From Octopus bimaculoides (taxonomy: Eukaryota), in the NCBI RefSeq assembly GCF_001194135.2, contig NC_068982.1, forward strand, positions 137,342,001 through 137,392,798: 50,798 nucleotides of DNA, given 5' to 3'. A program made the position numbers and the translations under genes. A model generated the notes under the pieces. That model was not told the origin of the DNA, did not search any database, and saw nothing but the letters and a program-made list of their open reading frames with translations. Shown in pieces: positions 17,074 to 50,798 of the stretch (its first letter is position 1; each line of letters opens with the position of its first letter).

Positions 17074-17380
17074 TGGTGGTTCTCAACCAGGGTCTATATA
17101 ACCTTTGGGGGTCCATGTAAGATAAATTGTTTATACTTCTATAAAACACAAAATATTTCAATTTTTTTTTAACACAATTCCTAATAAAATTTACTTATAA
17201 AAATATGATAGGATTATTAAAACATCGAAATAGCTATGAGTGCCCATCCAAACAAAATGGGAGTTAAAACAGCTGGGGGTCCATCCCAGCAAAACGGGAG
17301 TCAAAATAGCTACAGGGTTCCATCCGAGCAAAATAGGAAACAAAGGGATTCACAGGTACAAAAATGGTTGAGAACCATTG
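17074..17380. mobile_element. hAT-type MITE
   Basis: TGGTGGTTCTCAACC...GGTTGAGAACCATTG, with TSD GTTTAAAG/GTTTAAAC. Confidence 0.8.
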
Positions 17381-19855: not shown

Positions 19856-19946
19856 ATCAAATTGCCATTTATTCCTTAGTTTTCCAGCCTGGACGTCCCA
19901 CAAGTATATGGTTCCATCGAGTGTACCAACAGCAGCCCAAGGATGT
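19856..19946 (-). CDS. AAMP: AAMP-like exon 9
   Basis: cttgtag|A...GAT|gtgagt. (T)HPWAAVGTLDGTIYLWDVQAGKLRNKWQFD. Phase 2-0. Confidence 0.92.
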
Positions 19947-28613: not shown

Positions 28614-29292
28614 CAGTGGTTCTCAACCGGGATCCATATGGCCGTTGAGGTCCACATCAGATCTTTCGTGGGAGCCACACAACAAAATATTAAATTGGGG
28701 ATCCACAACAATATTTTAAGGGCCCCAGAAAAAATTCACTTTAGATATATGTATTGGTATATATTGCAAGAAACAGCCAGGTCTCTTTCTCTAACATTTT
28801 ACATAGTTCAACCTACACAAATTAACGTGTGTAAACATTGGCACCTGTGCCCAGCGTCGCCTTCCTGGCACTTGTGCCGGTGGCACGTGTAAAGACATTC
28901 AAGCGAGAACGTTGCCAGTGCCGCTGGACTGGCTCCTGTGCAGGTGGCACGTAAAATACACCATTTTGAGCGTGGCCGTTGCCAGTACTGCCGGACTGGC
29001 CCTCATGCCGGTGGCATGTAAATCGCGCCCACTACACTCTCAGAGTGGTTGGTGTTAGCAAGGGCATCCAGCTGTAGAAACTCTGCCAGATCAGATTGGA
29101 GCCTGGTGTAGCCATCTGGTTCACCAGTCCTCAGTCAAATCGTCCAACCTATGCTAACATGGAAAGCAGACGTTAAACGATGATGATGATTCTATAAAAC
29201 TAGTTTTTAAACACTGAATGGCTACGGGGGTCCACCAGAATAAATTAGCAATCAAAGGGGGTCCATCGATAAAAAATGGTTGAGAACCCCTG
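28614..29292. mobile_element. hAT-type MITE with nested RTE fragment
   Basis: CAGTGGTTCTCAACC...GGTTGAGAACCCCTG, with 8-bp TSD ATGTAGAT/ATGTGGAT. Confidence 0.85.
28835..29190 (+). mobile_element. RTE 3'UTR/tail fragment nested in a hAT MITE
   Basis: Three modules plus tail, interrupting the element at 28614-29292. Confidence 0.8.
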
Positions 29293-29402: not shown

Positions 29403-29542
29403 CTCAATATCATCACATTCAAAAGACCACACTTCTTCTCTGCTGCTGACTTTCCAGACTTTGAGAAAACCACTCAGGTCAGCTGTAGCAACATAAGTAC
29501 CATCAAAGCTAAAGGCAACGCTTGTCACTGAGTCTTTATGTC
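29403..29542 (-). CDS. AAMP: AAMP-like exon 4 (WD repeat)
   Basis: tttcag|GA...GAG|gtaggt. (G)[46 protein letters not shown]. Phase 1-0. Confidence 0.93.
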
Positions 29543-29686: not shown

Positions 29687-30070
29687 ATTACCTTCGCCTT
29701 AGCGAAGGTGGAGGTATTGTTTTCAGTCGCGTTTGTTTGTTTGTTTGTCCTTGGACATGATATCTCAAGAACCACTGGATGGATTCGGATGAAACTTTCA
29801 GGGATGTTTGACCTCGTGACTACCACGAACTGATTAAACTTTGGGATCGATCTGGTACTGGACAAGGATTCTGGATTATTTTTCCTGTTTCTTTCTTTTT
29901 TTTTTTTTATTAATTTTTGAGAGCAGTCAGGTTCATTTTTAATATTCTCGTTTGTGAGAGCAGTCGAGTTTATTTCAGATATTCTCATTTTAAAAATCAT
30001 CTCCAGCTAATCGTTGAGAGGACGTTGGTGTTGCCTTGGCAGAGGTTTGCACTCTCTGAGTAACTCTTGT
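29687..30070 (+). mobile_element. Non-autonomous Helentron/HINE-like element
   Basis: 5' attaccttcgccttagcgaaggtggaggt hairpin, (GTTT)n, 3' ccttggcagaggt...ctctgagt..ctcttgtt. The architecture is typical of Helentron-associated elements (family assignment from recall). Confidence 0.7.
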
Positions 30071-30963
30071 TTGTCTGTTATTAATGAATTAATAACAAAA
30101 CCTCGGAAGACGACGAATGACAGGCCACCAGGTGTAAAGGGAGATAACTACGATGGAATATAATCACGGTTTCTAATTTAGGCATAAAATCAACAGTTTT
30201 GAGGGAGTGTTAGTCAATGGCGTCATCGATCCCAATAAACAACTGGTACTTTATTTTATCGACCACATAAAGATGAAAAACAAGGTTGACTTCAGCGAGA
30301 TTTGAAAGATGGAATATAATAATATGAGATATTTTCATTCAGCACACCAATAGTCTACTATTAACGGTTGCACTCATACGTATGCATATCTGATGTGCTT
30401 CTGCATAGTTTTATCATGTAACATCCACTTTCCAGGCTACCATGGGCTGAACGGATCTGACAAGTCATAGGACTACGACATGTTGCAATGTCTAATTCGA
30501 CATGGTTTCTATGACTGTATGCTATTCCTAATGCCAACCATTTTACAGAATGTGCAGAGTGCATTTCTTTGTGGCACCAGCACTGGTGAGGATCGGCTTG
30601 TAACGTATACGTAACAATAACTGAAAGGGAATAGAAGATGGTGAGTGATGATTGAAGATGGAAGGATGAAGGAGAGTACGAGATGAGTACGGGGGTGGTG
30701 AGTGTGGTAGGAAACTGGGGAGAGGGGAGGGATTAATGATAATGAAATGATTGTGTATAGTGCTCAGGTGCACTACAACTCATCAAAGGTGCATGTACAG
30801 TACATAGAATTATGTACAAAAGTCAGGAAAGTGAACAGTGTATGAGTCATGATATATATGTGCGCATGCATATGGAGGGGGGATATCAAGTGTAGTGTTG
30901 TAATCAGAGCCAGAGCTGGTTTCAGCCGGGTTGGTAACGAAAGCGTTAATGTCCACTCTTTAA

Positions 30964-31835: not shown

Positions 31836-32310
31836 CTAAATAAATCTGAATTATTTACATCTATGTACCACCTAAATGCAGCCTTGCCAGTGCTGTGCAA
31901 AATCACCCAGGACACTCTGTGAAGTGGTTGGCATTAGGAAGGGCATCGAACCATAGAAACTATGTCGAAACAGACAGGGAGCCTGGTCAGCTGTTCAGCT
32001 CCTGTCAAAACAGTCCAACCTATGCCAGCAGGGAAAACAGACATCAAATGATGATGTTGATGATGAAAATAGGTGCAGGTGTGGCTGTGCGGTTAAGAAA
32101 TTTGCTTCCCTACCACCAGATTTCTGGGTTCAATCCCATTGCATCGCATTTTAGTGTCTTCTACTATAGCCCTGATCCAACCAAAGCCTGGTAAATGGAA
32201 ACTGAAAGAAGCCCATCATGTATACATATATGTGTGTGAATTAATGTTCGTTTTTATGTTCAGTTATAATAAAAACAATTTTACATTAATCTGTAGAGTA
32301 CAGATTTTAC

Positions 32311-32460
32311 AGGAAGGGCATCCAGCTGTAGAAACTCCGCCAGATCAGATTGGAGCGTAGTGCAGCCATCTGGTTTGCCAGTCCTCGGTCAAATCGTCTA
32401 ACCCATGCTAGCATGGAAAGCGGATGTTAAATAATGATGAAGATGATGATGATGATGATG
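32311..32460 (+). mobile_element. Short RTE tail insertion with target-site duplication
   Basis: Direct repeat TAGAGTACAGATTT at 32294-32307 and 32461-32474 flanks the 5'-truncated copy with its (GAT)n tail. Confidence 0.88.
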
Positions 32461-32877
32461 TAGAGTACAGATTTATCATCATCACTTAATGTACGCTTTC
32501 CATGCTGGCATGGGTTGGATGGTTTGACTGAAAACTGGCAAGCAGGGGAGCTACACCAGGTTCCAATCTGATATGGCTGGATGCCCTTCCTAATGCCAAC
32601 CACTTCGAGAGTGTAGTGGGTGCTTTTTACGTACCACTGGCATGGGTGTCATTAACCTAACACTGGCATCGGCCACAACTATTCACTTATATCACCAAGA
32701 GTCCATGAGGCTCAATGCTCAAATGGTGCTTTTTACATGCCACTGGCACAGGTGCCAGTCAGACGGCACTGGCATCAGCTACAACTATGATTTCACTCAG
32801 CTCAACAGGTCTTCAAGAATGCAATCCAATGATGGCTTAGCTGGTCAAAACTTCAAAGTCAGTCAACAACATTCTTG

Positions 32878-32924
<47 letters not shown>

Positions 32925-33136
32925 TGCATATGCTAGTGTCTCCTTGTCTTGACATTGCTTAATTGTTGTAAACGAATGCCCTTTGCTTCCGGTCATCCAT
33001 AACAAACACGTCTGGCTGTGAGGAGATATCAACTCGCTTGGAAACAGGTGAGGATTGGTGTCAGGAAGGGCATCCAACCATAAAAAATCTGCTGCAATAA
33101 ACTCCATCCGACCCATACAAGCATGGGAAAGTGATC

Positions 33137-33543
33137 ATCATCACCATTTGACATCTGTCTAACATGTTGACCCCTAAGGATCATATGGACCCCAGTTGAG
33201 AGCCATTGGTTTAGATTCTTGTTGTTCTGTGTGTATTCTTATGAATTATAAACCATTTTAATGTTTAATTACTCCTTTTATCTCTGTAGATGAATGGTTT
33301 GACAGGAGCAGTCAAACCTGAGGACTGCACCCAGTACTATTGTCTGCCTGGCATGGTTTTTGCAACTGGATGCCCTTCCTAACACCGACATCATCATTAT
33401 AATCAACATCATCGTTTAACGTCCGCTTTCCATGCTGGCATGGGTTCAACGGTTTGACTGAGGACTGGCGAGCCAGAAGGCTGCACCACGCTCCAATCTG
33501 ATCTGGCAGAGTTTCTACAGCTGGATGCCCTTCCTAACACCAA

Positions 33544-33574
<31 letters not shown>

Positions 33575-33850
33575 GTTTAACGTCCGCTTTCCATGCTGGC
33601 ATGGGTTGGACGGTTTGACTGAGGACTGGCGAACCAGATGGTTGCACCAGGCTCAAATCTGATCTGGCAGAGTTTCTACAGCCGGATACCCTTCCTAACG
33701 CTGACCAACAACTTTACAAAATGGATTGGATGCTTTTTTTACATGGCACCAACGCCAGAATGTTGAAGTCATCATCATCATCAACATCATCATTATCATT
33801 TAACGTCTGTCGTCTATGCTGGTATGGGTTTGACGGTTTGACTGGGCTGG
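33137..33850 (-). mobile_element. Cluster of head-to-tail RTE tail fragments
   Basis: At least four (CAT)n-gtttaacgtccgctttccatgc units in the same orientation. Confidence 0.8.
33164..33292. repeat. Perfect 129-bp inverted duplicate of 36003-36131
   Basis: Base-by-base identical to the reverse complement of 36003-36131. Confidence 0.95.
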
Positions 33851-34349
33851 CATGCTGAAAGGCTGAAACCAGACACCAGTCTGATTTGGTATTACAGCTG
33901 GAGGCCCACAATGATCACAATGATGATGAAAAGACATGATCGAAACAACAGGCTTATCTAAAATATCTAGACGGCAACAGATATACCTTTGATACTAGAC
34001 AATCATTCTTAAACTGGTTAATTATTATTTTTTCACTTACCACCCATTTCGGTATCAATAAAAAAGACACAACTGCTACCACTACAGCCTAATATGTAAC
34101 TGATACCGCATCTGATATCGTAATGATATGTAAAACTGTAAAATAATAGCATACAAGGCAAAGGTAACAGGACTGAAACAGATAATAATTTGTTTTCTTT
34201 ATAATCACAGCTATATAACAAAACAAATTATTATCAGTAAAAGCGGACGTTAAACGATGATGATGATGATGATGATCTAGTTCAGAACTGTTATCTTTGT
34301 CTTGTTGGTGTATTATTTTACAGTTATGCATGTCATTTCTCCCTTTTAT

Positions 34350-35085
34350 CATCATCATCATCGTTTAACGTCCGCTTTCCATGCTAGCATGGGTTGGACG
34401 ATTTGATTGAGGACTGGCGAACCAGATGGCTACACCAGGCTCCAATCTGATCTGGCAGAGTTTCTACAGCTGGATGCCCTTCCTAACGCCAACCACTCCA
34501 AGAGTGTGGTGGGTGCTTTTTATGTGCCACCGGCACAAGGGCCAGTCAGGCAGTACTGGCAATGACCACGCTCAAAATGGTGTTTTTTACGTGCCACCTG
34601 CACAGGAGCCTGTCCAGCGGCACTAGCAACGATCTCATTCGGATGTTTTTTTTCACCTGCCACGGGCACAAGTGCCAGTAAGGCAATGCTGGTAACGATC
34701 ACGCTCAAATGGTGCTATTTACGTGCCACCGGCACGGAAGCCAGACAGCTGCTCTGGCAATGATCACGCTCGGACGGTGATTTCTGTAGTGATTCCTGAA
34801 GGGCCAGAGGCTTTCCCTGTCTTCATACCTTTAATTGCTTTATCTACCAAGGTACTTTCAATTCAGATAGCTGGTCTCTCAGTTGGGTTGACATTTGGCA
34901 GACTCTCTTTCTCCCATTCATTCTCTTCGTTAAGCAACCTTTCATAGTGGCGTCTCCAAGTCTCTCTCCTTGCAGCCTCATTAAATGCAAGTGAGCCATC
35001 ATCTATGCAGGCACATTTCTCTCTTATGACATCACAATTCTCTCTCATATGTAAATTAACTGTTAGGGACATTAGCAGTGTTTGC
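34350..35085 (-). mobile_element. Internally deleted RTE LINE: pre-RT ORF2 fragment joined directly to 3'UTR modules and tail
   Basis: DDGSLAFNEAARRETWRRHYERLLNEENEWEKESLPNV...KAIKGMKTGKASGPSGIT joins at about 34778 to the same 3'UTR as 39571-40110. Confidence 0.85.
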
Positions 35086-35354
35086 ATGGAATAATAATTA
35101 GCACATCTAACACAAACCTTATGTATTATTTAGATCACCTTAAACAAAAGAAATTGTACCTTTAGACATTTACAACTGTTTAAGGCAATCTAAACAGATC
35201 TAATTTAGCCTAGAGGCAGCTTATCCTGTTCAGGCTATATTATTAGCATTATCCTGCGTTGGAGAATTTAAAATCACTTCTTTAACTTTCTAAAACATCT
35301 CAACGCTTCTAAAGCAAACTTCTGTTTGTTTACATTCATCGTAATTTGAATTTA

Positions 35355-35389
<35 letters not shown>

Positions 35390-35393
<4 letters not shown>

Positions 35394-35625
35394 CACCATT
35401 TGAGCGTGGCCGATGCCAGTGCCACCTGACTGGCTCCTATGCCAGTGGCACATAAAAAGCACCCACTACACTCTTGGAGTGGTTGGTGTTAGGAAGGGCA
35501 TCCAGCTGTAGAAACCTTGCCAGGTCAGATTGGAGCCCGGTGCAGCCTCCTGGCTCGCCAGTCCTCAGTCAAACCGTCCATCCCATGCCAGCATGGAAAA
35601 CAGATGTTAAACGACGACGACGATG
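35390..35625 (+). mobile_element. RTE tail fragment
   Basis: aaagcaccatttgagcgtgg...gttaaacgacgacgacgatgat. Confidence 0.78.
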
Positions 35626-35885
35626 ATATATACACACACAAACAGACTTTCACACTTATATTTGTGTGTATGTCTTTGTTTGTTCCCCCAACAGCTTGGT
35701 AGTATCGGTTTGGTTATGTCCCCATAACATAATGGTTTATCAAAGAGACCAGTAGAATAAGTAAGAGTGTCAAAGCAAATCAAGTGCTGGGGTTAGTTTG
35801 TTCAGCTAAACTCTTCAAAGCAGTGCCCCAGCCTGGCCACAGTGTGATGACTGAAACAAACAAAAGATATGTAGAAATGTCATAC

Positions 35886-36005
35886 CATTACATTCCAAAA
35901 CCACGTTTCCAGTTTCAGTGTCCCACAGATAAGCTTTGTCATCTTGTCCCCCGGTGACTGCCATCTTCAGGCCAGAGGGATGCAGAGATATGCAGTAGAC
36001 AACAT
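35886..36005 (-). CDS. AAMP: AAMP-like exon 3 (WD repeat)
   Basis: ctctgtag|AT...G|gtatga. (D)VVYCISLHPSGLKMAVTGGQDDKAYLWDTETGNVVLECN versus AAMP [27 protein letters not shown]. 120 nt, phase 1-1. Confidence 0.92.
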
Positions 36006-36086
36006 CTACAGAGATAAAAGGAGTAATTAAACATTAAAATGGTTTATAATTCATAAGAATACACACAGAACAACAAGAATCTAAAC

Positions 36087-36965
36087 CAATGGCTCTCAAC
36101 TGGGGTCCATATGATCCTTAGGGGTCAACATATTTATTTTTATATAATTCCCAACAAGAGCACTCAGAGAGTGCAAACCTCCACCAACATCCCTTCAACA
36201 ATTAACCAGAGATGATTTTGAAAATGAGAATATCTGAAACAAACTCAACTGCTCTCACAAACAAGAATACTAATAATGAACCTGATTGCTCTCAAAAATT
36301 AACCCATTACCTACCAGTGATCTCATATGAGATCACTTAAAAATTACAAATTTCGTAATTATCTGTCAATATTTACACATATCTAACCTTTTTGCTATAT
36401 CTACTAGGTATATTTCTCTGATATTCAAATGAGGTTTGCTAATTTTTCACCCAATATCTCGCTTATTTTTATTTAAAATGTTATTTTGAAATGTTATTTT
36501 GATCATTCCAATGTGTATCTAAGGCTGTTTTATGCTAGAAATCAAAGTTTCATAAAAAAATTCCAGTTAATAGAATTATGGGAGGTAATGGGTTAAGTAA
36601 AAAAAACAAGAAAATAAACCAGAATCTTTGTCCGGTAGCGGATCGATCCCCAAATCTAATCAATTTGTGCCAGTCATGAGGCCAAACATCCCTGAAAGTT
36701 TCATCTGAATCCATCCAGTGGTTCTTGAGATATCTTGTCCNNNNNNNNNNAATCCATCCAGTGGTTCTTGAGATATCTTGTCCACAGACAAACAAACAAA
36801 CACGACTGAAAAAACAATACCTCCGCCTTCGCTAAGGCGGAGGTAATAATATTTAAATATAAAAATAAATGGGATTTTTTTAAGCATTGAATGGTTATGA
36901 AGGGTCCGGTACAATAAAATAGGAATCAAAGGGATCCATAGTCAAAAAATGGTCAAGAACCACTG
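36087..36965. mobile_element. hAT-type MITE with nested Helentron-like element
   Basis: Perfect 8-bp TSD ATCTAAAC (36079-36086, 36966-36973). Termini CAATGGCTCTCAAC and GGTCAAGAACCACTG. Confidence 0.85.
36153..36848 (-). mobile_element. Non-autonomous Helentron/HINE-like element (nested in hAT MITE)
   Basis: Reverse complement of the 29687-30070 family, with a perfect hairpin acctccgccttcgctaaggcggaggt at about 36819-36844. Confidence 0.72.
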
Positions 36966-37607
36966 ATCTAAACAATAGCATATGCATTTATTTGCAATAC
37001 ATTCGAGTAGATTTTAATGTAAATACACTGGTCACTGACTGTTGCCTCAAGGTCTCTTTACATCAATGAATCTTGTGTCTTATGAAGATTTATCAACTAA
37101 AAGGATGTGATGGTCTCCAATGATAGAAAACAAGTGATCAGCATCTTCATATTTGAGCAAGAATATATTGAGAAAGAACAGATATGCTGTTGCTTAAACA
37201 ATAAAAATGAAACAAAAGGTTGTTGTGCCAATAAACGGACACACACACACATTGGCTTTATTTCACTTCATTATTTATTGTCCAGTTGGTTAACCATTTA
37301 ACTATTGTTCAATCAATCAATCAATCGGCTAGGTTCGTCAAAGCCATTTGCAACTTCATCAATGACATGCCTTCTCTGCTCCAAGCCCCATTTGATTTCA
37401 TCCCCTATCCCCACCTTTTCAGTTTTGGGGGTTTGAAATCAGAACCCAGTGGAATAAGGACTGAATCAAAAAGATTTGAAAATGAATGAAATTTCAAAAT
37501 TCAAGTTAAAACTCAAAAATTCTTTAAAAGTTGAAATCTGGATTAAAAGTGTTGACAAATTTAATCATTTTAATTACCGTAACATCAAAACTTGAATAAC
37601 ATTTTAA

Positions 37608-39570: not shown

Positions 39571-41370
39571 ATCATCATCATTGTTTAACGTCCGCTTTCC
39601 ATGCTAGCATGGGTTTGACAATTTGACTGAGGATTGGCAAACCAGATGGCTGCACCAGGCTCCAATATGATCTGCCAAAGTTTCTACAGTTGGATGCCCT
39701 TCCTAACACCAACCACTCCGAGAGTGTAGTGGGTGCTTTTACATGCCACTGGCATGAGGGTCAGTTAGGCAGTACTGGCAACGACCACACTCAAATGGTG
39801 TTTTTTACATGCCACCTGCACAGGAGCTAGTCCAGCAGCACTGGCAACGACCTTGCTCAAATGTTTATTCACATACCACTGGCATAAGTGCCAGTAAGGT
39901 GACGCTGGTAATGATCACGCTCAAATGATGCTTTTTACGTGCCACCGGCATGGAAGCCAGACGGCTGCTCTGGCAATGAACATGCTCGGATGGTGCTCTT
40001 AGCGCTCCACTGGTACGAATGCCAGTCATCGAATTTGATTCGATTTCGATTTCACTTGCCTCAACAGGTCTTCATAAGCAGAGTTTAGTGTCTAATGAAG
40101 GAAAGGTACGCATATGTGGGCTGGTTACACCCCTGGCAGAGGCCATAGGTTATGGTCTCACTTGGCTTGCCGGGTCTTCTCAAGCACAGCATATTTCCAA
40201 AGGTCTTGGTCACTAGTCACTGCCTCAGTGAGGCCTAATGTTCGAAGGTCGTGCTCCACCACCTCATCTCAGGACTTCCTAGGTCTACCTCTTCCACAGG
40301 TTCCCCCAACCGCTAGGGTGTGGCACTTTTTCACACAGCTATCGTCATCCATTCTCGCCACATGACCATACCAGCGCAATTGTCTCTCTTGCACACCACA
40401 ACTGATGCTTCTTAGATCCAACTTTTCTCTCAAGGTACTTACACTCTGTCAAGTATGCACACTAACATTACACATCCATTGGCGCATACTAGCTTCATTC
40501 CTTGCGAGCTTACGCATGTCCTCAGCAGTCAAGGCCCATGTTTCACTGCCATGTAGCATGGCTGTTCGTACACATGCGTCATACAGTCTGCCTTTTACTC
40601 TGAGCGAGAGGCCTTTTGTCACCAGCAGAGGTAAGAGCTCTCTGAACTTTGCCCAGACTATTNNNNNNNNNNACTCTGAGCGAGAGGCCTTTTGTCACCA
40701 GCAGAGGTAAGAGCTCTCTGAACTTTGCCCAGACTATTCTTATTCTAGCAGCTACACTTTCAGTGCACCCTCCTCCACTACTGACTTGGTCACCTAGGTA
40801 ACAGAAGCTATCAACTACTTCTAGTTTTTCTCCCCGGAATGTGACAGAAGTTCTTCTCTGCACATTTTCAGTGTTTATTGCTCCTGAACATCTGCCACAT
40901 ACAAAAACTATCTTCCCAGTTAGCCTTCCTTTGATATTGCTGCACTTCTTATGTGTCCATAGCTTACACTGGGTACATCTTATAGAGTTTCTACCTACGC
41001 CTTTTCTACAGATTGAGCAGGGCCATCTACCTGAAGGGGTTTGTGTTTTGTCTACCTTCCTACTTATTAGGACTTTCGTTTTAGCTAGGTTGATTCTAAG
41101 GCCCTTCGATTCTAATCCTTGCTTGCACACCTGAAACTCCTCCTCTAGTTCTCATAGTGACTCAGCAATCTGAGCAAGGTCATCAGCATAGAGGAGCTAG
41201 CTCCCAGGGGCATCTTGTCTTGAATTTCTGTGTTATTGCCTGGAGGACTATGATAAATAGGAGGGAGCTAAGGACTGAACTTTGGTGGACCCCTACCGCT
41301 ACCTGGAATTCTTCACTGTTCTCATTGCCAACCCTCACCTTACTGACAGCATCCCTGTACATGGCTTTTC
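39571..41370 (-). mobile_element. 5'-truncated RTE-clade LINE (RT C-terminal half, PHD-like finger, modular 3'UTR, (GAT)n tail)
   Basis: Minus-strand GVHQSSVLS..LLFIIVLQ, YADD at 41179-41190, RINLAKTK, FCYLGD, LRWYGHV..M, GRGRPRK, stop at 40158-40160. The 3'UTR ends gcggacgttaaacaatgatgatgat. An N-gap lies inside. Confidence 0.92.
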
Positions 41371-44392: not shown

Positions 44393-44948
44393 TGCAGGCA
44401 TGGCTGTGTGGTAAGAAGCTTGCTTCTCAACCACATCGTTCCAGGTTCAGTCCCACTGCATGGCACCTTGGGCAAGTGTCTTCTACAATAGCCTAACACA
44501 ACAATACCTTGTGAGTGGATTTAGTAGACAGAAACTGAAAGAAGCCCATCGTGTGTGTGCGTGTATGTATGTATATATATATATATATATTTATATAGGC
44601 ACAGGTGTGACTGTGGTAAGAAGCTTGCTTCTCAACCACATCGTTCCAGGTTCAGTCCCACTGCATGGCACCTTGGGCAAGTGTCTTCTACAATAGCCTA
44701 ACACAACAATGCCTTGTGAGTGGATTTGGTAGACAGAAACTGAAAGAAGCCCATCGTGTGTGCGTGTGTGTATATTTCCCCCACCACTGCTTGACAGCCA
44801 ATGTTGGTTTGTTTACATCCCTGTAACTGAGTGGTTTGGCAAAACAGACCAATAGAATAAGTACCAGGCTCAACAGAAAAAAAGTACCAGGGTTGACTCA
44901 TTCAACTAAAGGTTCTTCAAGGCGGTGCCCCAGCATGGCCGCAGTCTA
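44393..44948 (+). mobile_element. SINE family A with tandemly duplicated head
   Basis: Two heads offset by 205 bp, followed by one 3' half. Confidence 0.8.
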
Positions 44949-44976: not shown

Positions 44977-45075
44977 CTGTGTGCTTCTCAAATGTCAGTT
45001 TTGATGAGTCTGAGACTGGTTCGAACATTTCCACATCTTCAGTTTCACCCTCAGCCCCTGCATCTTCTGCGATAT
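44977..45075 (-). CDS. AAMP: AAMP-like exon 2
   Basis: poly-T caag|AT...G|gtaagt. (D)IAEDAGAEGETEDVEMFEPVSDSSKLTFEKHT; the DSxxTFxxH motif precedes the first WD repeat. Phase 1-1. Confidence 0.88.

Positions 45076-50753: not shown

Positions 50754-50798
<45 letters not shown>

What the first reader, a model, noticed from the sequence alone, without database searches (positions are those of the whole stretch)
33164..36131. Perfect 129-bp inverted copy of the AAMP exon-3 splice acceptor in the next intron
Seen: 33164-33292 is 100% identical to the reverse complement of 36003-36131. That segment holds the branch region, pyrimidine tract, AG and first 3 nt of AAMP exon 3, plus the left end of a hAT MITE and its TSD. 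The copy is unique sequence rather than a dispersed repeat. It interrupts an older RTE tail, with ATG microhomology at both junctions (aac|atg ... gatg|aatggtttgac), as expected for a templated insertion during break repair. Inference: in the AAMP pre-mRNA the two arms can form a 129-bp perfect duplex looping out exon 3 and masking its 3' splice site. Exon 3 is 120 nt and phase 1-1, so skipping would delete one WD repeat in frame. The duplex is also an ideal ADAR substrate, and editing of the acceptor AG would destroy it (coleoid cephalopods edit RNA extensively). This could be a young, RNA-structure-based splicing switch.
Basis: partly seen in the sequence, partly recalled or inferred. Interest (0 to 1): 0.75.

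Follow-up and report, generated by a model that had tools for sequence, protein, structure and literature searches.

The report
Young inverted copy of a splice acceptor
A 129-base piece holding the acceptor splice site of one exon of the AAMP gene was copied, perfectly and backwards, into the next intron, most likely as a scar of DNA break repair; the gene's RNA can now fold into a long perfect double strand around that exon, but nothing yet shows that this regulates anything.

Summary
33164-33292 is 129/129 identical to the reverse complement of 36003-36131, and it is the longest exact repeat in the window. The source arm carries the first 3 nt of a 120-nt AAMP/SQT1 exon (36005-35886, minus strand). 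It also carries 73 nt of unique intron, an 8-bp target-site duplication and 45 nt of a hAT-type MITE. It is therefore a copy of this locus, not a transposon insertion. The copy sits in an old SINE-like element and replaces its 13-nt palindromic core, with ATG microhomology at both joints. A cis fold-back synthesis model reproduces the sequence exactly. Best reading: a young templated insertion from microhomology-mediated break repair. The predicted arm duplex is -228.8 kcal/mol and loops out the exon. That makes it a new example of the known loop-out exon-skipping or circRNA inverted-repeat architecture, and a likely ADAR substrate. The "splicing switch" is untested. There is no evolutionary depth and no RNA data. 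The exon is already flanked by 24 imperfect inverted repeats. Skipping would remove the first WD40 repeat, which is probably harmful. No independent reads or related genomes could be reached, so an assembly artefact (about 10%) remains open.

The parts
33164..33292 (+). Inserted copy. It reads as the acceptor module on the + strand, so it is antisense to AAMP. It forms the downstream arm of the RNA duplex, inside intron 3.
   Evidence: 129/129 identical to the reverse complement of 36003-36131. It interrupts a SINE-like element.
36003..36131 (-). Source arm: last 126 nt of intron 2 (branch region, pyrimidine tract, AG at 36007-36006) plus the first 3 nt of exon 3.
   Evidence: It is contiguous with exon 3 and with the rest of the MITE, so it is the original.
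35886..36005 (-). AAMP exon 3: 120 nt, phase 1/1, encodes DVVYCISLHPSGLKMAVTGGQDDKAYLWDTETGNVVLECN, the first WD40 repeat.
   Evidence: tblastn to AAMP proteins, splice sites, Pfam WD40.
36087..36965 (.). hAT-type MITE (TIR CAATGGCTCTCAAC / CAGTGGTTCTTGAC) carrying a nested second TE and a 10-N gap. Its left 45 nt lie in the source arm.
   Evidence: TIRs and a perfect 8-bp TSD. Sister elements at 28614-29292 and 17074-17380. Nested TE related to 29720-30095.
36079..36086 (.). Left target-site duplication ATCTAAAC of the MITE, included in the copied segment. The right TSD is at 36966-36973.
33134..33163 (+). Left half of the interrupted old SINE-like element: (ATC)n-CCATTTGACATCTGTCTAAC.
   Evidence: Aligns to the family members' ATCATCGTTTAACGTCCGCTTTCC (D7).
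33293..33392 (+). Right half of the interrupted SINE-like element: AATGGTTTGACAGGAGC...CCTTCCTAACACCGAC.
   Evidence: The element is 60-69% identical to its relatives and lacks their 13-nt core ctggcatgggttg.
44977..45075 (-). AAMP exon 2 (99 nt), ending CACACAG|gtaagt. It is the upstream partner if exon 3 is skipped.
29403..29542 (-). AAMP exon 4 (140 nt). It is the downstream partner if exon 3 is skipped.

Best explanation
The copy is a real, evolutionarily young templated insertion made during microhomology-mediated repair of a break (or stalled fork) inside an old SINE-like element in AAMP intron 3.

Proposed mechanism, all inferred:
1. The resected 3' tail of the right-hand broken end (minus strand, ...CCATTCAT-3') folded back about 2.7 kb along its own strand.
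2. It primed on the ATG that opens exon 3 and copied 126 nt of intron 2.
3. It dissociated and annealed through its new ...CAT-3' to the ...TAACATG-3' left end.

The net result is 126 nt gained and about 13 nt of the SINE's palindromic core lost.

As a by-product, the AAMP pre-mRNA now carries a perfect 129-bp inverted repeat. One arm is the branch site, pyrimidine tract and AG of exon 3. The other lies 2.7 kb downstream in intron 3. When they pair they loop out exon 3 and bury its 3' splice site.

The expected consequences are inferred, not shown. I expect promiscuous A-to-I editing of both arms and some increase in exon-3 skipping or unproductive RNA. I do not see evidence for a selected regulatory switch.
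For: - Exact identity and coordinates.
- The copy spans exon, unique intron, TSD and MITE end, so it is a copy of this locus and the direction of copying is clear.
- The copy has no 8-bp TSD, no poly(A) and no TE termini at its ends.
- The target is an old repeat, 60-69% identical to relatives that are 81-93% identical to one another, and it is missing exactly the 13-nt core.
- ATG is present at both ends of the template and at both junctions.
- An in-silico fold-back synthesis gives a product identical to the window.
- Fold-back inverted templated insertions at breaks, and Pol theta stem-loop extension primed by as few as two terminal base pairs, are documented (abstracts of PMC11724301 and PMC11292364; MMBIR templated insertions in PMC8421209).
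- Duplex of -228.8 kcal/mol, with 129/129 pairs present in the MFE.
- Inverted intronic repeats flanking an exon promote loop-out skipping: deleting one Alu arm reduced skipping in 7 of 8 minigenes, with PSI changes from about 1 to more than 40% (PMC13019944; PMC13019027).
Against: - Documented fold-back and MMBIR inserts are usually much shorter and closer to their template: about 5-34 bp in yeast, and templates within 100 bp in MMBSearch. Here 126 nt were copied from 2.7 kb away, which is at the extreme.
- The insert size fits RNA-derived class 2 templated sequence insertions better (73-414 bp).
- The priming site happens to be the ATG at the exon start, 1 of 120 ATGs within 5 kb of that tail. 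That is a roughly 1% coincidence that the DNA model does not explain.
- Only one assembly was seen. It shows unmerged duplicates at two 10-N gaps.
- No reads, individuals or sister species were available.
- No RNA evidence exists for pairing, editing or skipping.
Confidence: 0.62

Rival explanations
1. The template was RNA. In this reading the patch was reverse-transcribed from the 3'-terminal 126 nt of excised intron 2 (or from unspliced AAMP RNA at the transcription site). It was then captured at the break by end joining, as in class 2 templated sequence insertions. The downstream consequences would be the same.
For: If the flanking ATG belongs to the target, the templated part (36128-36006) ends exactly at the last base of intron 2, the AG. 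The SINE consensus does have ..gcATGgg.. at that place. Under a DNA model that coincidence has about 1% probability. The 126-129 nt size, the microdeletion, the microhomology, and the absence of TSD and poly(A) all match class 2 TSIPs. Those are 73-414 bp, are attributed to reverse-transcribed RNA, and include intronic donors (PMC5110952).
Against: Reported TSI donors are scattered over the genome. Here the donor lies 2.7 kb away in cis and inverted, which is exactly what cis fold-back DNA synthesis predicts. The ownership of the right-hand ATG cannot be decided. An alternative alignment of the old SINE (..TG|AATGG versus ..TTGGACGG) assigns at least the A to the template. A single event cannot discriminate between the two models.
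Confidence: 0.12
2. Assembly artefact: the 129-bp inverted segment is not in the animal's genome and was introduced by the assembler, gap filler or polisher.
For: The window contains two 10-N gaps, each flanked by exact direct duplicates (36708-36740 = 36751-36783; 40597-40662 = 40673-40738). Local assembly errors therefore exist, and one lies 600 bp from the source arm. Perfect identity is also what an artefact would give.
Against: Both junctions are clean. The event also removed 13 nt of the target and uses 3-nt microhomology at each side, which is the signature of a biological repair event and not of a known assembler error. Mis-threading an inverted repeat in an assembly graph would invert the 2.7-kb spacer, yet exon 3 has the same orientation as the other exons. 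The copy is not next to a gap or a contig end.
Confidence: 0.1
3. One reading: the duplex is a functional RNA-structure splicing switch. Pairing masks the exon-3 acceptor and gives an in-frame isoform lacking one WD repeat, and ADAR editing tunes or destroys the acceptor AG.
For: The duplex is thermodynamically overwhelming. Skipping is in frame. Loop-out skipping by flanking inverted repeats is established, and weak acceptors are especially prone to it. The acceptor A sits in a UAG triplet, the context ADARs prefer (established knowledge, not tested here).
Against: Zero divergence between the arms gives no sign of selection. A brand-new insertion is neutral or deleterious by default. Skipping removes the first blade-forming WD40 repeat of a beta-propeller chaperone. 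The exon is already spanned by 24 imperfect inverted repeats. The acceptor is made about 2.7 kb before its complement, so exon definition can precede pairing. No RNA-seq was available, and the taxon, and hence 'extensive editing', is unverified.
Confidence: 0.05
4. The main RNA-level outcome is not linear skipping. Instead the outcome would be back-splicing of exon 3 into a 120-nt circular RNA, or nuclear retention, degradation or Dicer processing of the hyper-edited dsRNA. That would lower AAMP output.
For: Inverted repeats of only 30-40 nt flanking an exon are sufficient for circularisation (PMC4201285, abstract). The arms flank exon 3 directly.
Against: Back-splicing needs the same 3' splice site that the duplex buries, because the arm reaches 3 nt into the exon. 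A 120-nt single-exon circle is small. Nothing was tested.
Confidence: 0.08

Closest known systems
Fold-back (snap-back) templated inverted insertions in microhomology-mediated end joining, and MMBIR templated insertions (MMB-TI)
   Same: The copy is inverted and comes from a nearby cis template. There are 3-nt microhomologies at both junctions and a small target deletion, and the donor is intact (PMC11724301, PMC11292364, PMC8421209).
   Different: Here 126 nt were copied from 2.7 kb away. Described events are mostly 5-50 bp with templates within about 100 bp.
Class 2 templated sequence insertion polymorphisms (Onozawa/Aplan)
   Same: The size falls in the 73-414 bp range. There is microdeletion plus microhomology, and no TSD or poly(A). 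Intronic donors are known.
   Different: Those donors are usually distant or on other chromosomes and are thought to be RNA-derived. Here the donor is local, and its inverted geometry is explained by DNA fold-back.
Loop-out exon skipping and circRNA formation by inverted intronic repeats (inverted Alu pairs, e.g. TBXT; Liang and Wilusz minigenes)
   Same: Reverse-complementary arms lie in the two introns flanking one exon, and a stable stem is predicted that loops out the exon.
   Different: The arms are not transposons but a unique-sequence copy. They are perfect rather than about 80-90% matched. One arm is itself the branch site, pyrimidine tract and AG, so looping and direct splice-site sequestration coincide. 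No splicing data exist.
Splice-site sequestration in local RNA stems, and long-range structures such as those described in Drosophila (PMC2724269)
   Same: A core splicing signal would be base-paired and inaccessible.
   Different: Known cases are conserved and often supported by covariation. This one has no evolutionary depth, and its partner lies 2.7 kb downstream.

Membership tests
Microhomology-mediated templated insertion (fold-back TMEJ / MMBIR type) | The insert is an exact copy of a nearby sequence and the donor remains intact | tested here: met
   129/129 identity; the donor is contiguous with exon 3 and the MITE
Microhomology-mediated templated insertion (fold-back TMEJ / MMBIR type) | Microhomology at both junctions between template ends and target | tested here: met
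   ATG at 33164-33166 and 33290-33292. The template starts and ends with ATG, and the target family has ccATGctggcATGgg.
Microhomology-mediated templated insertion (fold-back TMEJ / MMBIR type) | Inverted orientation consistent with cis fold-back of a resected 3' tail | tested here: met
   The simulated fold-back product equals the window sequence
Microhomology-mediated templated insertion (fold-back TMEJ / MMBIR type) | Typical scale: tens of bp, with the template within about 100 bp | tested here: not met
   126 nt copied from 2.7 kb away, against 5-34 bp and within 100 bp. The mechanism may still apply, but this is an outlier in scale.
Microhomology-mediated templated insertion (fold-back TMEJ / MMBIR type) | Dependence on Pol theta or another specific polymerase | not testable with these tools
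   This needs genetics.
Class 2 templated sequence insertion (RNA-derived patch) | No TSD and no poly(A); microdeletion and microhomology; 73-414 bp | tested here: met
   searches compared
Class 2 templated sequence insertion (RNA-derived patch) | Donor is an RNA (for example a spliced or processed end) | tested here: inconclusive
   The donor end coincides with the intron-2 3' terminus only if the ATG is assigned to the target
Transposon insertion (hAT MITE, or SINE/LINE retrotransposition) | Element termini at the insert ends and a target-site duplication (8 bp for hAT; variable TSD plus tail for LINE-mediated insertion) | tested here: not met
   The MITE terminus and its TSD lie inside the copy. 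The copy ends 45 nt into the MITE and 3 nt into the exon. The target lost 13 nt instead of being duplicated, and there is no poly(A).
hAT-superfamily MITE (element 36087-36965) | Terminal inverted repeats plus an 8-bp TSD | tested here: met
   CAATGGCTCTCAAC / CAGTGGTTCTTGAC and the TSD ATCTAAAC on both sides. Two sister copies also have 8-bp TSDs. All three TSDs fit nTnnnnAn, a consensus recalled from memory.
Loop-out exon-skipping inverted repeat pair | Reverse-complementary arms in the upstream and downstream introns of one exon, predicted to pair stably | tested here: met
Loop-out exon-skipping inverted repeat pair | The exon is actually skipped more often when the pair is present | not testable with these tools
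   No RNA-seq, no transcript database hit for this species, and no minigene.
AAMP / Sqt1 WD40 protein (the host gene) | Sequence similarity across several exons to named AAMP/SQT1 proteins; WD40 repeats | tested here: met
   E = 8.6e-68 and 54% identity to AAMP proteins; a JGI hit is named SQT1. Exon map. Pfam WD40 E = 5e-25.

The most novel reading that the evidence does not exclude
The newborn duplex is already a working, editing-sensitive modulator of AAMP. In this reading, pairing with the intron-3 copy masks the exon-3 acceptor in a tissue- or temperature-dependent way. ADAR editing of the UAG acceptor makes skipping irreversible, and the insertion is rising in frequency or fixed because of that effect. 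It would be a directly observable birth of a long-range RNA-structure splicing switch from a DNA-repair scar. A weaker variant is not excluded either: the scar may have been templated by the excised intron-2 RNA.
Probability: 0.05. Interest if true: 0.75.

Novelty: new member of a known kind. Interest (0 to 1): 0.33.

Why it matters
If real, this is a clean natural example of how a single break-repair event can create a perfect long-range RNA duplex around an exon in one step. The result is the same architecture that inverted Alu pairs provide in primates, but made from unique sequence and including the splice acceptor itself. If the insertion is polymorphic, the two alleles in a heterozygote form a built-in controlled experiment. 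That experiment could measure how far a 129-bp perfect stem 2.7 kb downstream can compete with co-transcriptional recognition of a 3' splice site, and how ADAR treats such a stem. It is also an unusually long and distant fold-back templated insertion. Its donor end coincides with an intron terminus, which bears on whether local RNA can template germline repair. As a single untested locus it is a candidate, not a discovery.

Tried and rejected
1. Independent copies of the locus. A protein search with the exon-3 peptide found nothing. A 199-aa AAMP query found only relatives at 62% identity or less, none from a close species. Exact look-ups of the two small ORFs crossing the junctions found no contigs. 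Exact-pattern scans of the metagenome collection for the arm and for exon 4 gave 0 hits. Presence or absence in other individuals or species could therefore not be tested.

2. TE origin of the copy. Rejected, because the MITE end and its TSD are internal to the copy and the target shows no TSD and no tail.

3. Dispersed-repeat status of the arm. Only weak matches (75-78%) were found, and they are limited to the MITE TIR of sister elements.

4. MAFFT aligned the insert's tail (aatGTTTAAttac..) with the SINE 5' part. I judged this a chance AT-rich similarity, because the true SINE 5' part lies to the left of the insert.

5. Rfam scan of the whole window. No family reached threshold, so there is no intronic snoRNA, miRNA or other known RNA to explain the segment.

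6. Literature search for the SINE core sequence. No hits. The species and repeat family names remain unverified.

7. PDB search. It returned only generic WD40 propellers, so blade-level modelling of the skipped isoform was not pursued.
Full report
**Observation**

The repeat is real and exact. Window 33164-33292 equals the reverse complement of 36003-36131 at all 129 positions. The repeat finder reports it as 132 nt at 99% (I3), because two of the next three outward bases also match. It is the longest exact repeat of either orientation in the 50.8-kb window. The runners-up are a 99-nt direct SINE pair and the 66- and 33-nt duplicates that flank two 10-N gaps. A 22-mer from the arm occurs only at these two places, with 0 expected in shuffles.

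**Gene context**

A WD40 gene lies on the minus strand. Its translated exons match AAMP (angio-associated migratory cell protein; yeast Sqt1) proteins. The evidence:
- tblastn with a human AAMP sequence that I wrote from memory, used only as a probe;
- a database search with the joined exons: best E = 8.6e-68, 54% identity, hits named AAMP and "ribosome assembly protein SQT1";
- tblastn of those hits back onto the window.

The exons I could place are:
- exon 2: 45075-44977;
- exon 3: 36005-35886;
- exon 4: 29542-29403;
- exon 5: 26169-26025;
- exon 6: 24405-24322;
- exon 7: 23298-23192;
- later exons near 19945, 18148 and 16993.

Exon 3 is 120 nt and phase 1 at both ends. Its acceptor is ...ttactccttttatctctgtag|ATG and its donor is AATG|gtatga. 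It encodes the first WD40 repeat. Joining exon 2 to exon 4 keeps the reading frame. Intron 2 is about 9 kb and intron 3 about 6.3 kb. The copy lies in intron 3, 2,710 nt from the source arm.

No close relative of this protein was in the protein collection. The cephalopod attribution is therefore not verified by any tool result.

**What the 129 nt are**

Read in the sense of the gene, the source arm has four parts:
- 45 nt of the left end of a MITE;
- the MITE's 8-bp target-site duplication;
- 73 nt of unique intron, including the branch region, pyrimidine tract and AG;
- the first 3 nt (ATG) of exon 3.

The MITE spans 36087-36965. Its terminal inverted repeats are CAATGGCTCTCAAC and CAGTGGTTCTTGAC, and the TSD ATCTAAAC is perfect on both sides. 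Two sister elements (28614-29292 and 17074-17380) also have 8-bp TSDs. This fits the hAT superfamily.

The copy carries a TE terminus and its TSD in its interior, and it ends at arbitrary points, 45 nt into the MITE and 3 nt into the exon. It therefore cannot be an independent TE insertion. It is a copy of this particular locus. The source arm is contiguous with its exon and with the rest of the MITE, so the direction of copying is 36003-36131 to 33164-33292.

**Where it landed**

The flanks of the copy are the two halves of a SINE-like element, (ATC)n-GTTTAACGTCCGCTTTCCATGCTGGCATGGGTTGGACGGTTTGAC.... The window holds more than 20 copies of this element in both orientations. The interrupted copy is only 60-69% identical to its relatives, while those relatives are 81-93% identical to one another. 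It is therefore old.

With one ATG kept, the interrupted copy lacks exactly the 13 nt ctggcatgggttg that all the others have. That stretch is the centre of the small palindrome CCATGC-TG-GCATGG. The event thus added 126 nt and removed about 13 nt. ATG is shared between template and target at both joints. There is no TSD and no poly(A) tail.

**Mechanism of origin (inferred)**

I wrote out a cis fold-back model and tested it.
1. A break occurs in the SINE core.
2. The right-hand end is resected, leaving a minus-strand 3' tail ending ...GTCAAACCATTCAT-3'.
3. The terminal CAT pairs with the ATG at 36005-36003 on the same strand, 2.7 kb away.
4. 126 nt are copied.
5. The new ...GTCAACAT-3' end pairs with the left end ...CTGTCTAACATG-3'.

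The predicted product is identical to the window. The model accounts for the inversion, the cis position, the two 3-nt microhomologies and the small deletion.

Fold-back templated inverted insertions at breaks are documented. So is Pol theta stem-loop extension primed by two terminal base pairs, and so are MMBIR templated insertions (abstracts of PMC11724301 and PMC11292364; PMC8421209). Those events are usually far shorter and closer to their template: about 5-34 bp, or templates within 100 bp. This one would be an outlier in scale.

**A rival origin: an RNA template**

In size and junction features the insert resembles the class 2 templated sequence insertions of Onozawa and Aplan. Those are 73-414 bp, show microdeletion and microhomology, lack TSD and poly(A), are attributed to reverse-transcribed RNA, and include intronic donors (PMC5110952).

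One detail favours RNA. If the right-hand ATG belongs to the target, the templated part ends exactly at the last base of intron 2, as the 3' end of an excised intron would. Under the DNA model the priming ATG is 1 of 120 within 5 kb, so this is a roughly 1% coincidence.

Against RNA, reported donors of that class are scattered over the genome. Here the donor is local, and it is inverted exactly as fold-back predicts. The ownership of the ATG cannot be settled from this old, diverged SINE copy. I put the RNA-template variant at about 12%.

**Artefact?**

The assembly is imperfect. Both 10-N gaps are flanked by exact duplicates, which look like unmerged contig ends. One gap lies 600 bp from the source arm.

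The copy itself is not at a gap. It has two clean junctions with microhomology and a target microdeletion, which is a biological signature. Mis-threading an inverted repeat in an assembly graph would invert the spacer, yet exon 3 is co-oriented with the other exons. I could not reach any reads or an independent assembly. I leave about 10% for an artefact.

**RNA-level consequences**

What is shown: the two arms give a duplex of -228.8 kcal/mol, against -16 and -21 kcal/mol for each arm folded alone. In the minimum-free-energy fold of the 3.2-kb pre-mRNA segment, all 129 positions pair with the expected partner.

The rest is inferred from established knowledge.
- A perfect duplex longer than 100 bp is a promiscuous ADAR substrate, and the acceptor A lies in a UAG triplet, the preferred context.
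- Exon-flanking inverted repeats promote loop-out skipping and circularisation (PMC13019027; PMC13019944, where deleting one Alu arm reduced skipping in 7 of 8 minigenes, with PSI changes of about 1 to more than 40%; PMC4201285).

Several points argue against a "switch".
- The arms have zero differences, so there is no evidence of constraint, only of youth.
- Exon 3 is already spanned by 24 imperfect inverted TE matches between introns 2 and 3, including a 236-nt pair at 83% identity, and intron 3 is full of competing intra-intron pairs.
- The acceptor is transcribed about 2.7 kb before its complement, so U2AF/U2 binding and exon definition can come first.
- Skipping deletes the first WD40 repeat of a beta-propeller, which is more likely to disable the protein than to diversify it.
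- The duplex buries the same 3' splice site that back-splicing would need.

**Verdict**

The origin as a microhomology-mediated templated insertion is well supported. The dsRNA potential is real. The proposed regulatory function is untested and, on priors, unlikely.

The feature is a new example of two known kinds: a templated repair insertion, and an exon-flanking intronic inverted repeat. It is notable for its length, its perfection, its inclusion of the splice acceptor, and the coincidence of its end with an intron terminus.

The decisive experiments are junction-spanning reads or PCR, genotyping of individuals and sister species, allele-specific RNA-seq for skipping, back-splicing and A-to-G clusters, and a minigene.

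Noticed in passing
window 36708-36783 and 40597-40738: Both 10-N gaps (36741-36750, 40663-40672) are flanked by exact direct duplicates of 33 and 66 bp. These look like contig ends that overlap but were not merged, so the true sequence is probably shorter and gap-free. The first gap lies inside the MITE in intron 2.
   Followed up: partly
window 36006-36128 versus 33167-33289: If the shared ATGs are assigned to the target, the copied segment ends exactly at the last nucleotide (AG) of intron 2. That is a roughly 1% coincidence under DNA fold-back (1 of 120 ATG sites in 5 kb). It hints at an excised-intron RNA template.
   Followed up: partly
window 33163-33293 (target) and family copies such as 33428-33444: The 13 nt lost at the insertion site are the centre of a small palindrome (CCATGC-TG-GCATGG) present in every other copy of this SINE-like family. 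It may be a fragile or hairpin-forming site that started the break.
   Followed up: no
window 36150-36870 and 29720-30095: A second, unclassified TE is nested inside the hAT MITE in intron 2. It ends in the palindromic CCTCCGCCTTCGCTAAGGCGGAGG. An inverted relative (83-87% identity) lies in intron 3, forming another inverted pair that spans exon 3.
   Followed up: partly
window 44407-44505 and 44612-44710: A 99-bp exact direct repeat: two adjacent copies of another SINE-like repeat (GGCTGTGTGGTAAGAAGCTTGCTTCTCAACCACATCG...) separated by a (TG)n/(TA)n microsatellite, in intron 2 close to exon 2. It could be a recent tandem duplication or a collapse or expansion artefact.
   Followed up: no
window 28614-29292 and 17074-17380: Two further members of the same hAT-type MITE family lie inside AAMP introns, each with an 8-bp TSD (ATGTAGAT/ATGTGGAT and GTTTAAAG/GTTTAAAC). 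All three TSDs fit nTnnnnAn.
   Followed up: partly
window 33164-33292, + strand: On the + strand the copy is a complete 3' splice-site module (branch region, pyrimidine tract, AG) antisense to AAMP. It could serve as a cryptic acceptor for any antisense transcript through intron 3.
   Followed up: no
window 32300-35630: Intron 3 is packed with the SINE-like element in both orientations, for example arms 34347-34589 and 35386-35628 (243 nt, 85%). The pre-mRNA therefore already contains many long imperfect dsRNA stems that would compete with the new duplex and attract ADAR.
   Followed up: partly
window 32880-32923 and 50758-50798: Simple repeats: a (GT)n run just upstream of the interrupted SINE, and a (TA)n run at the window end that scores as a perfect palindrome.
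   Followed up: no
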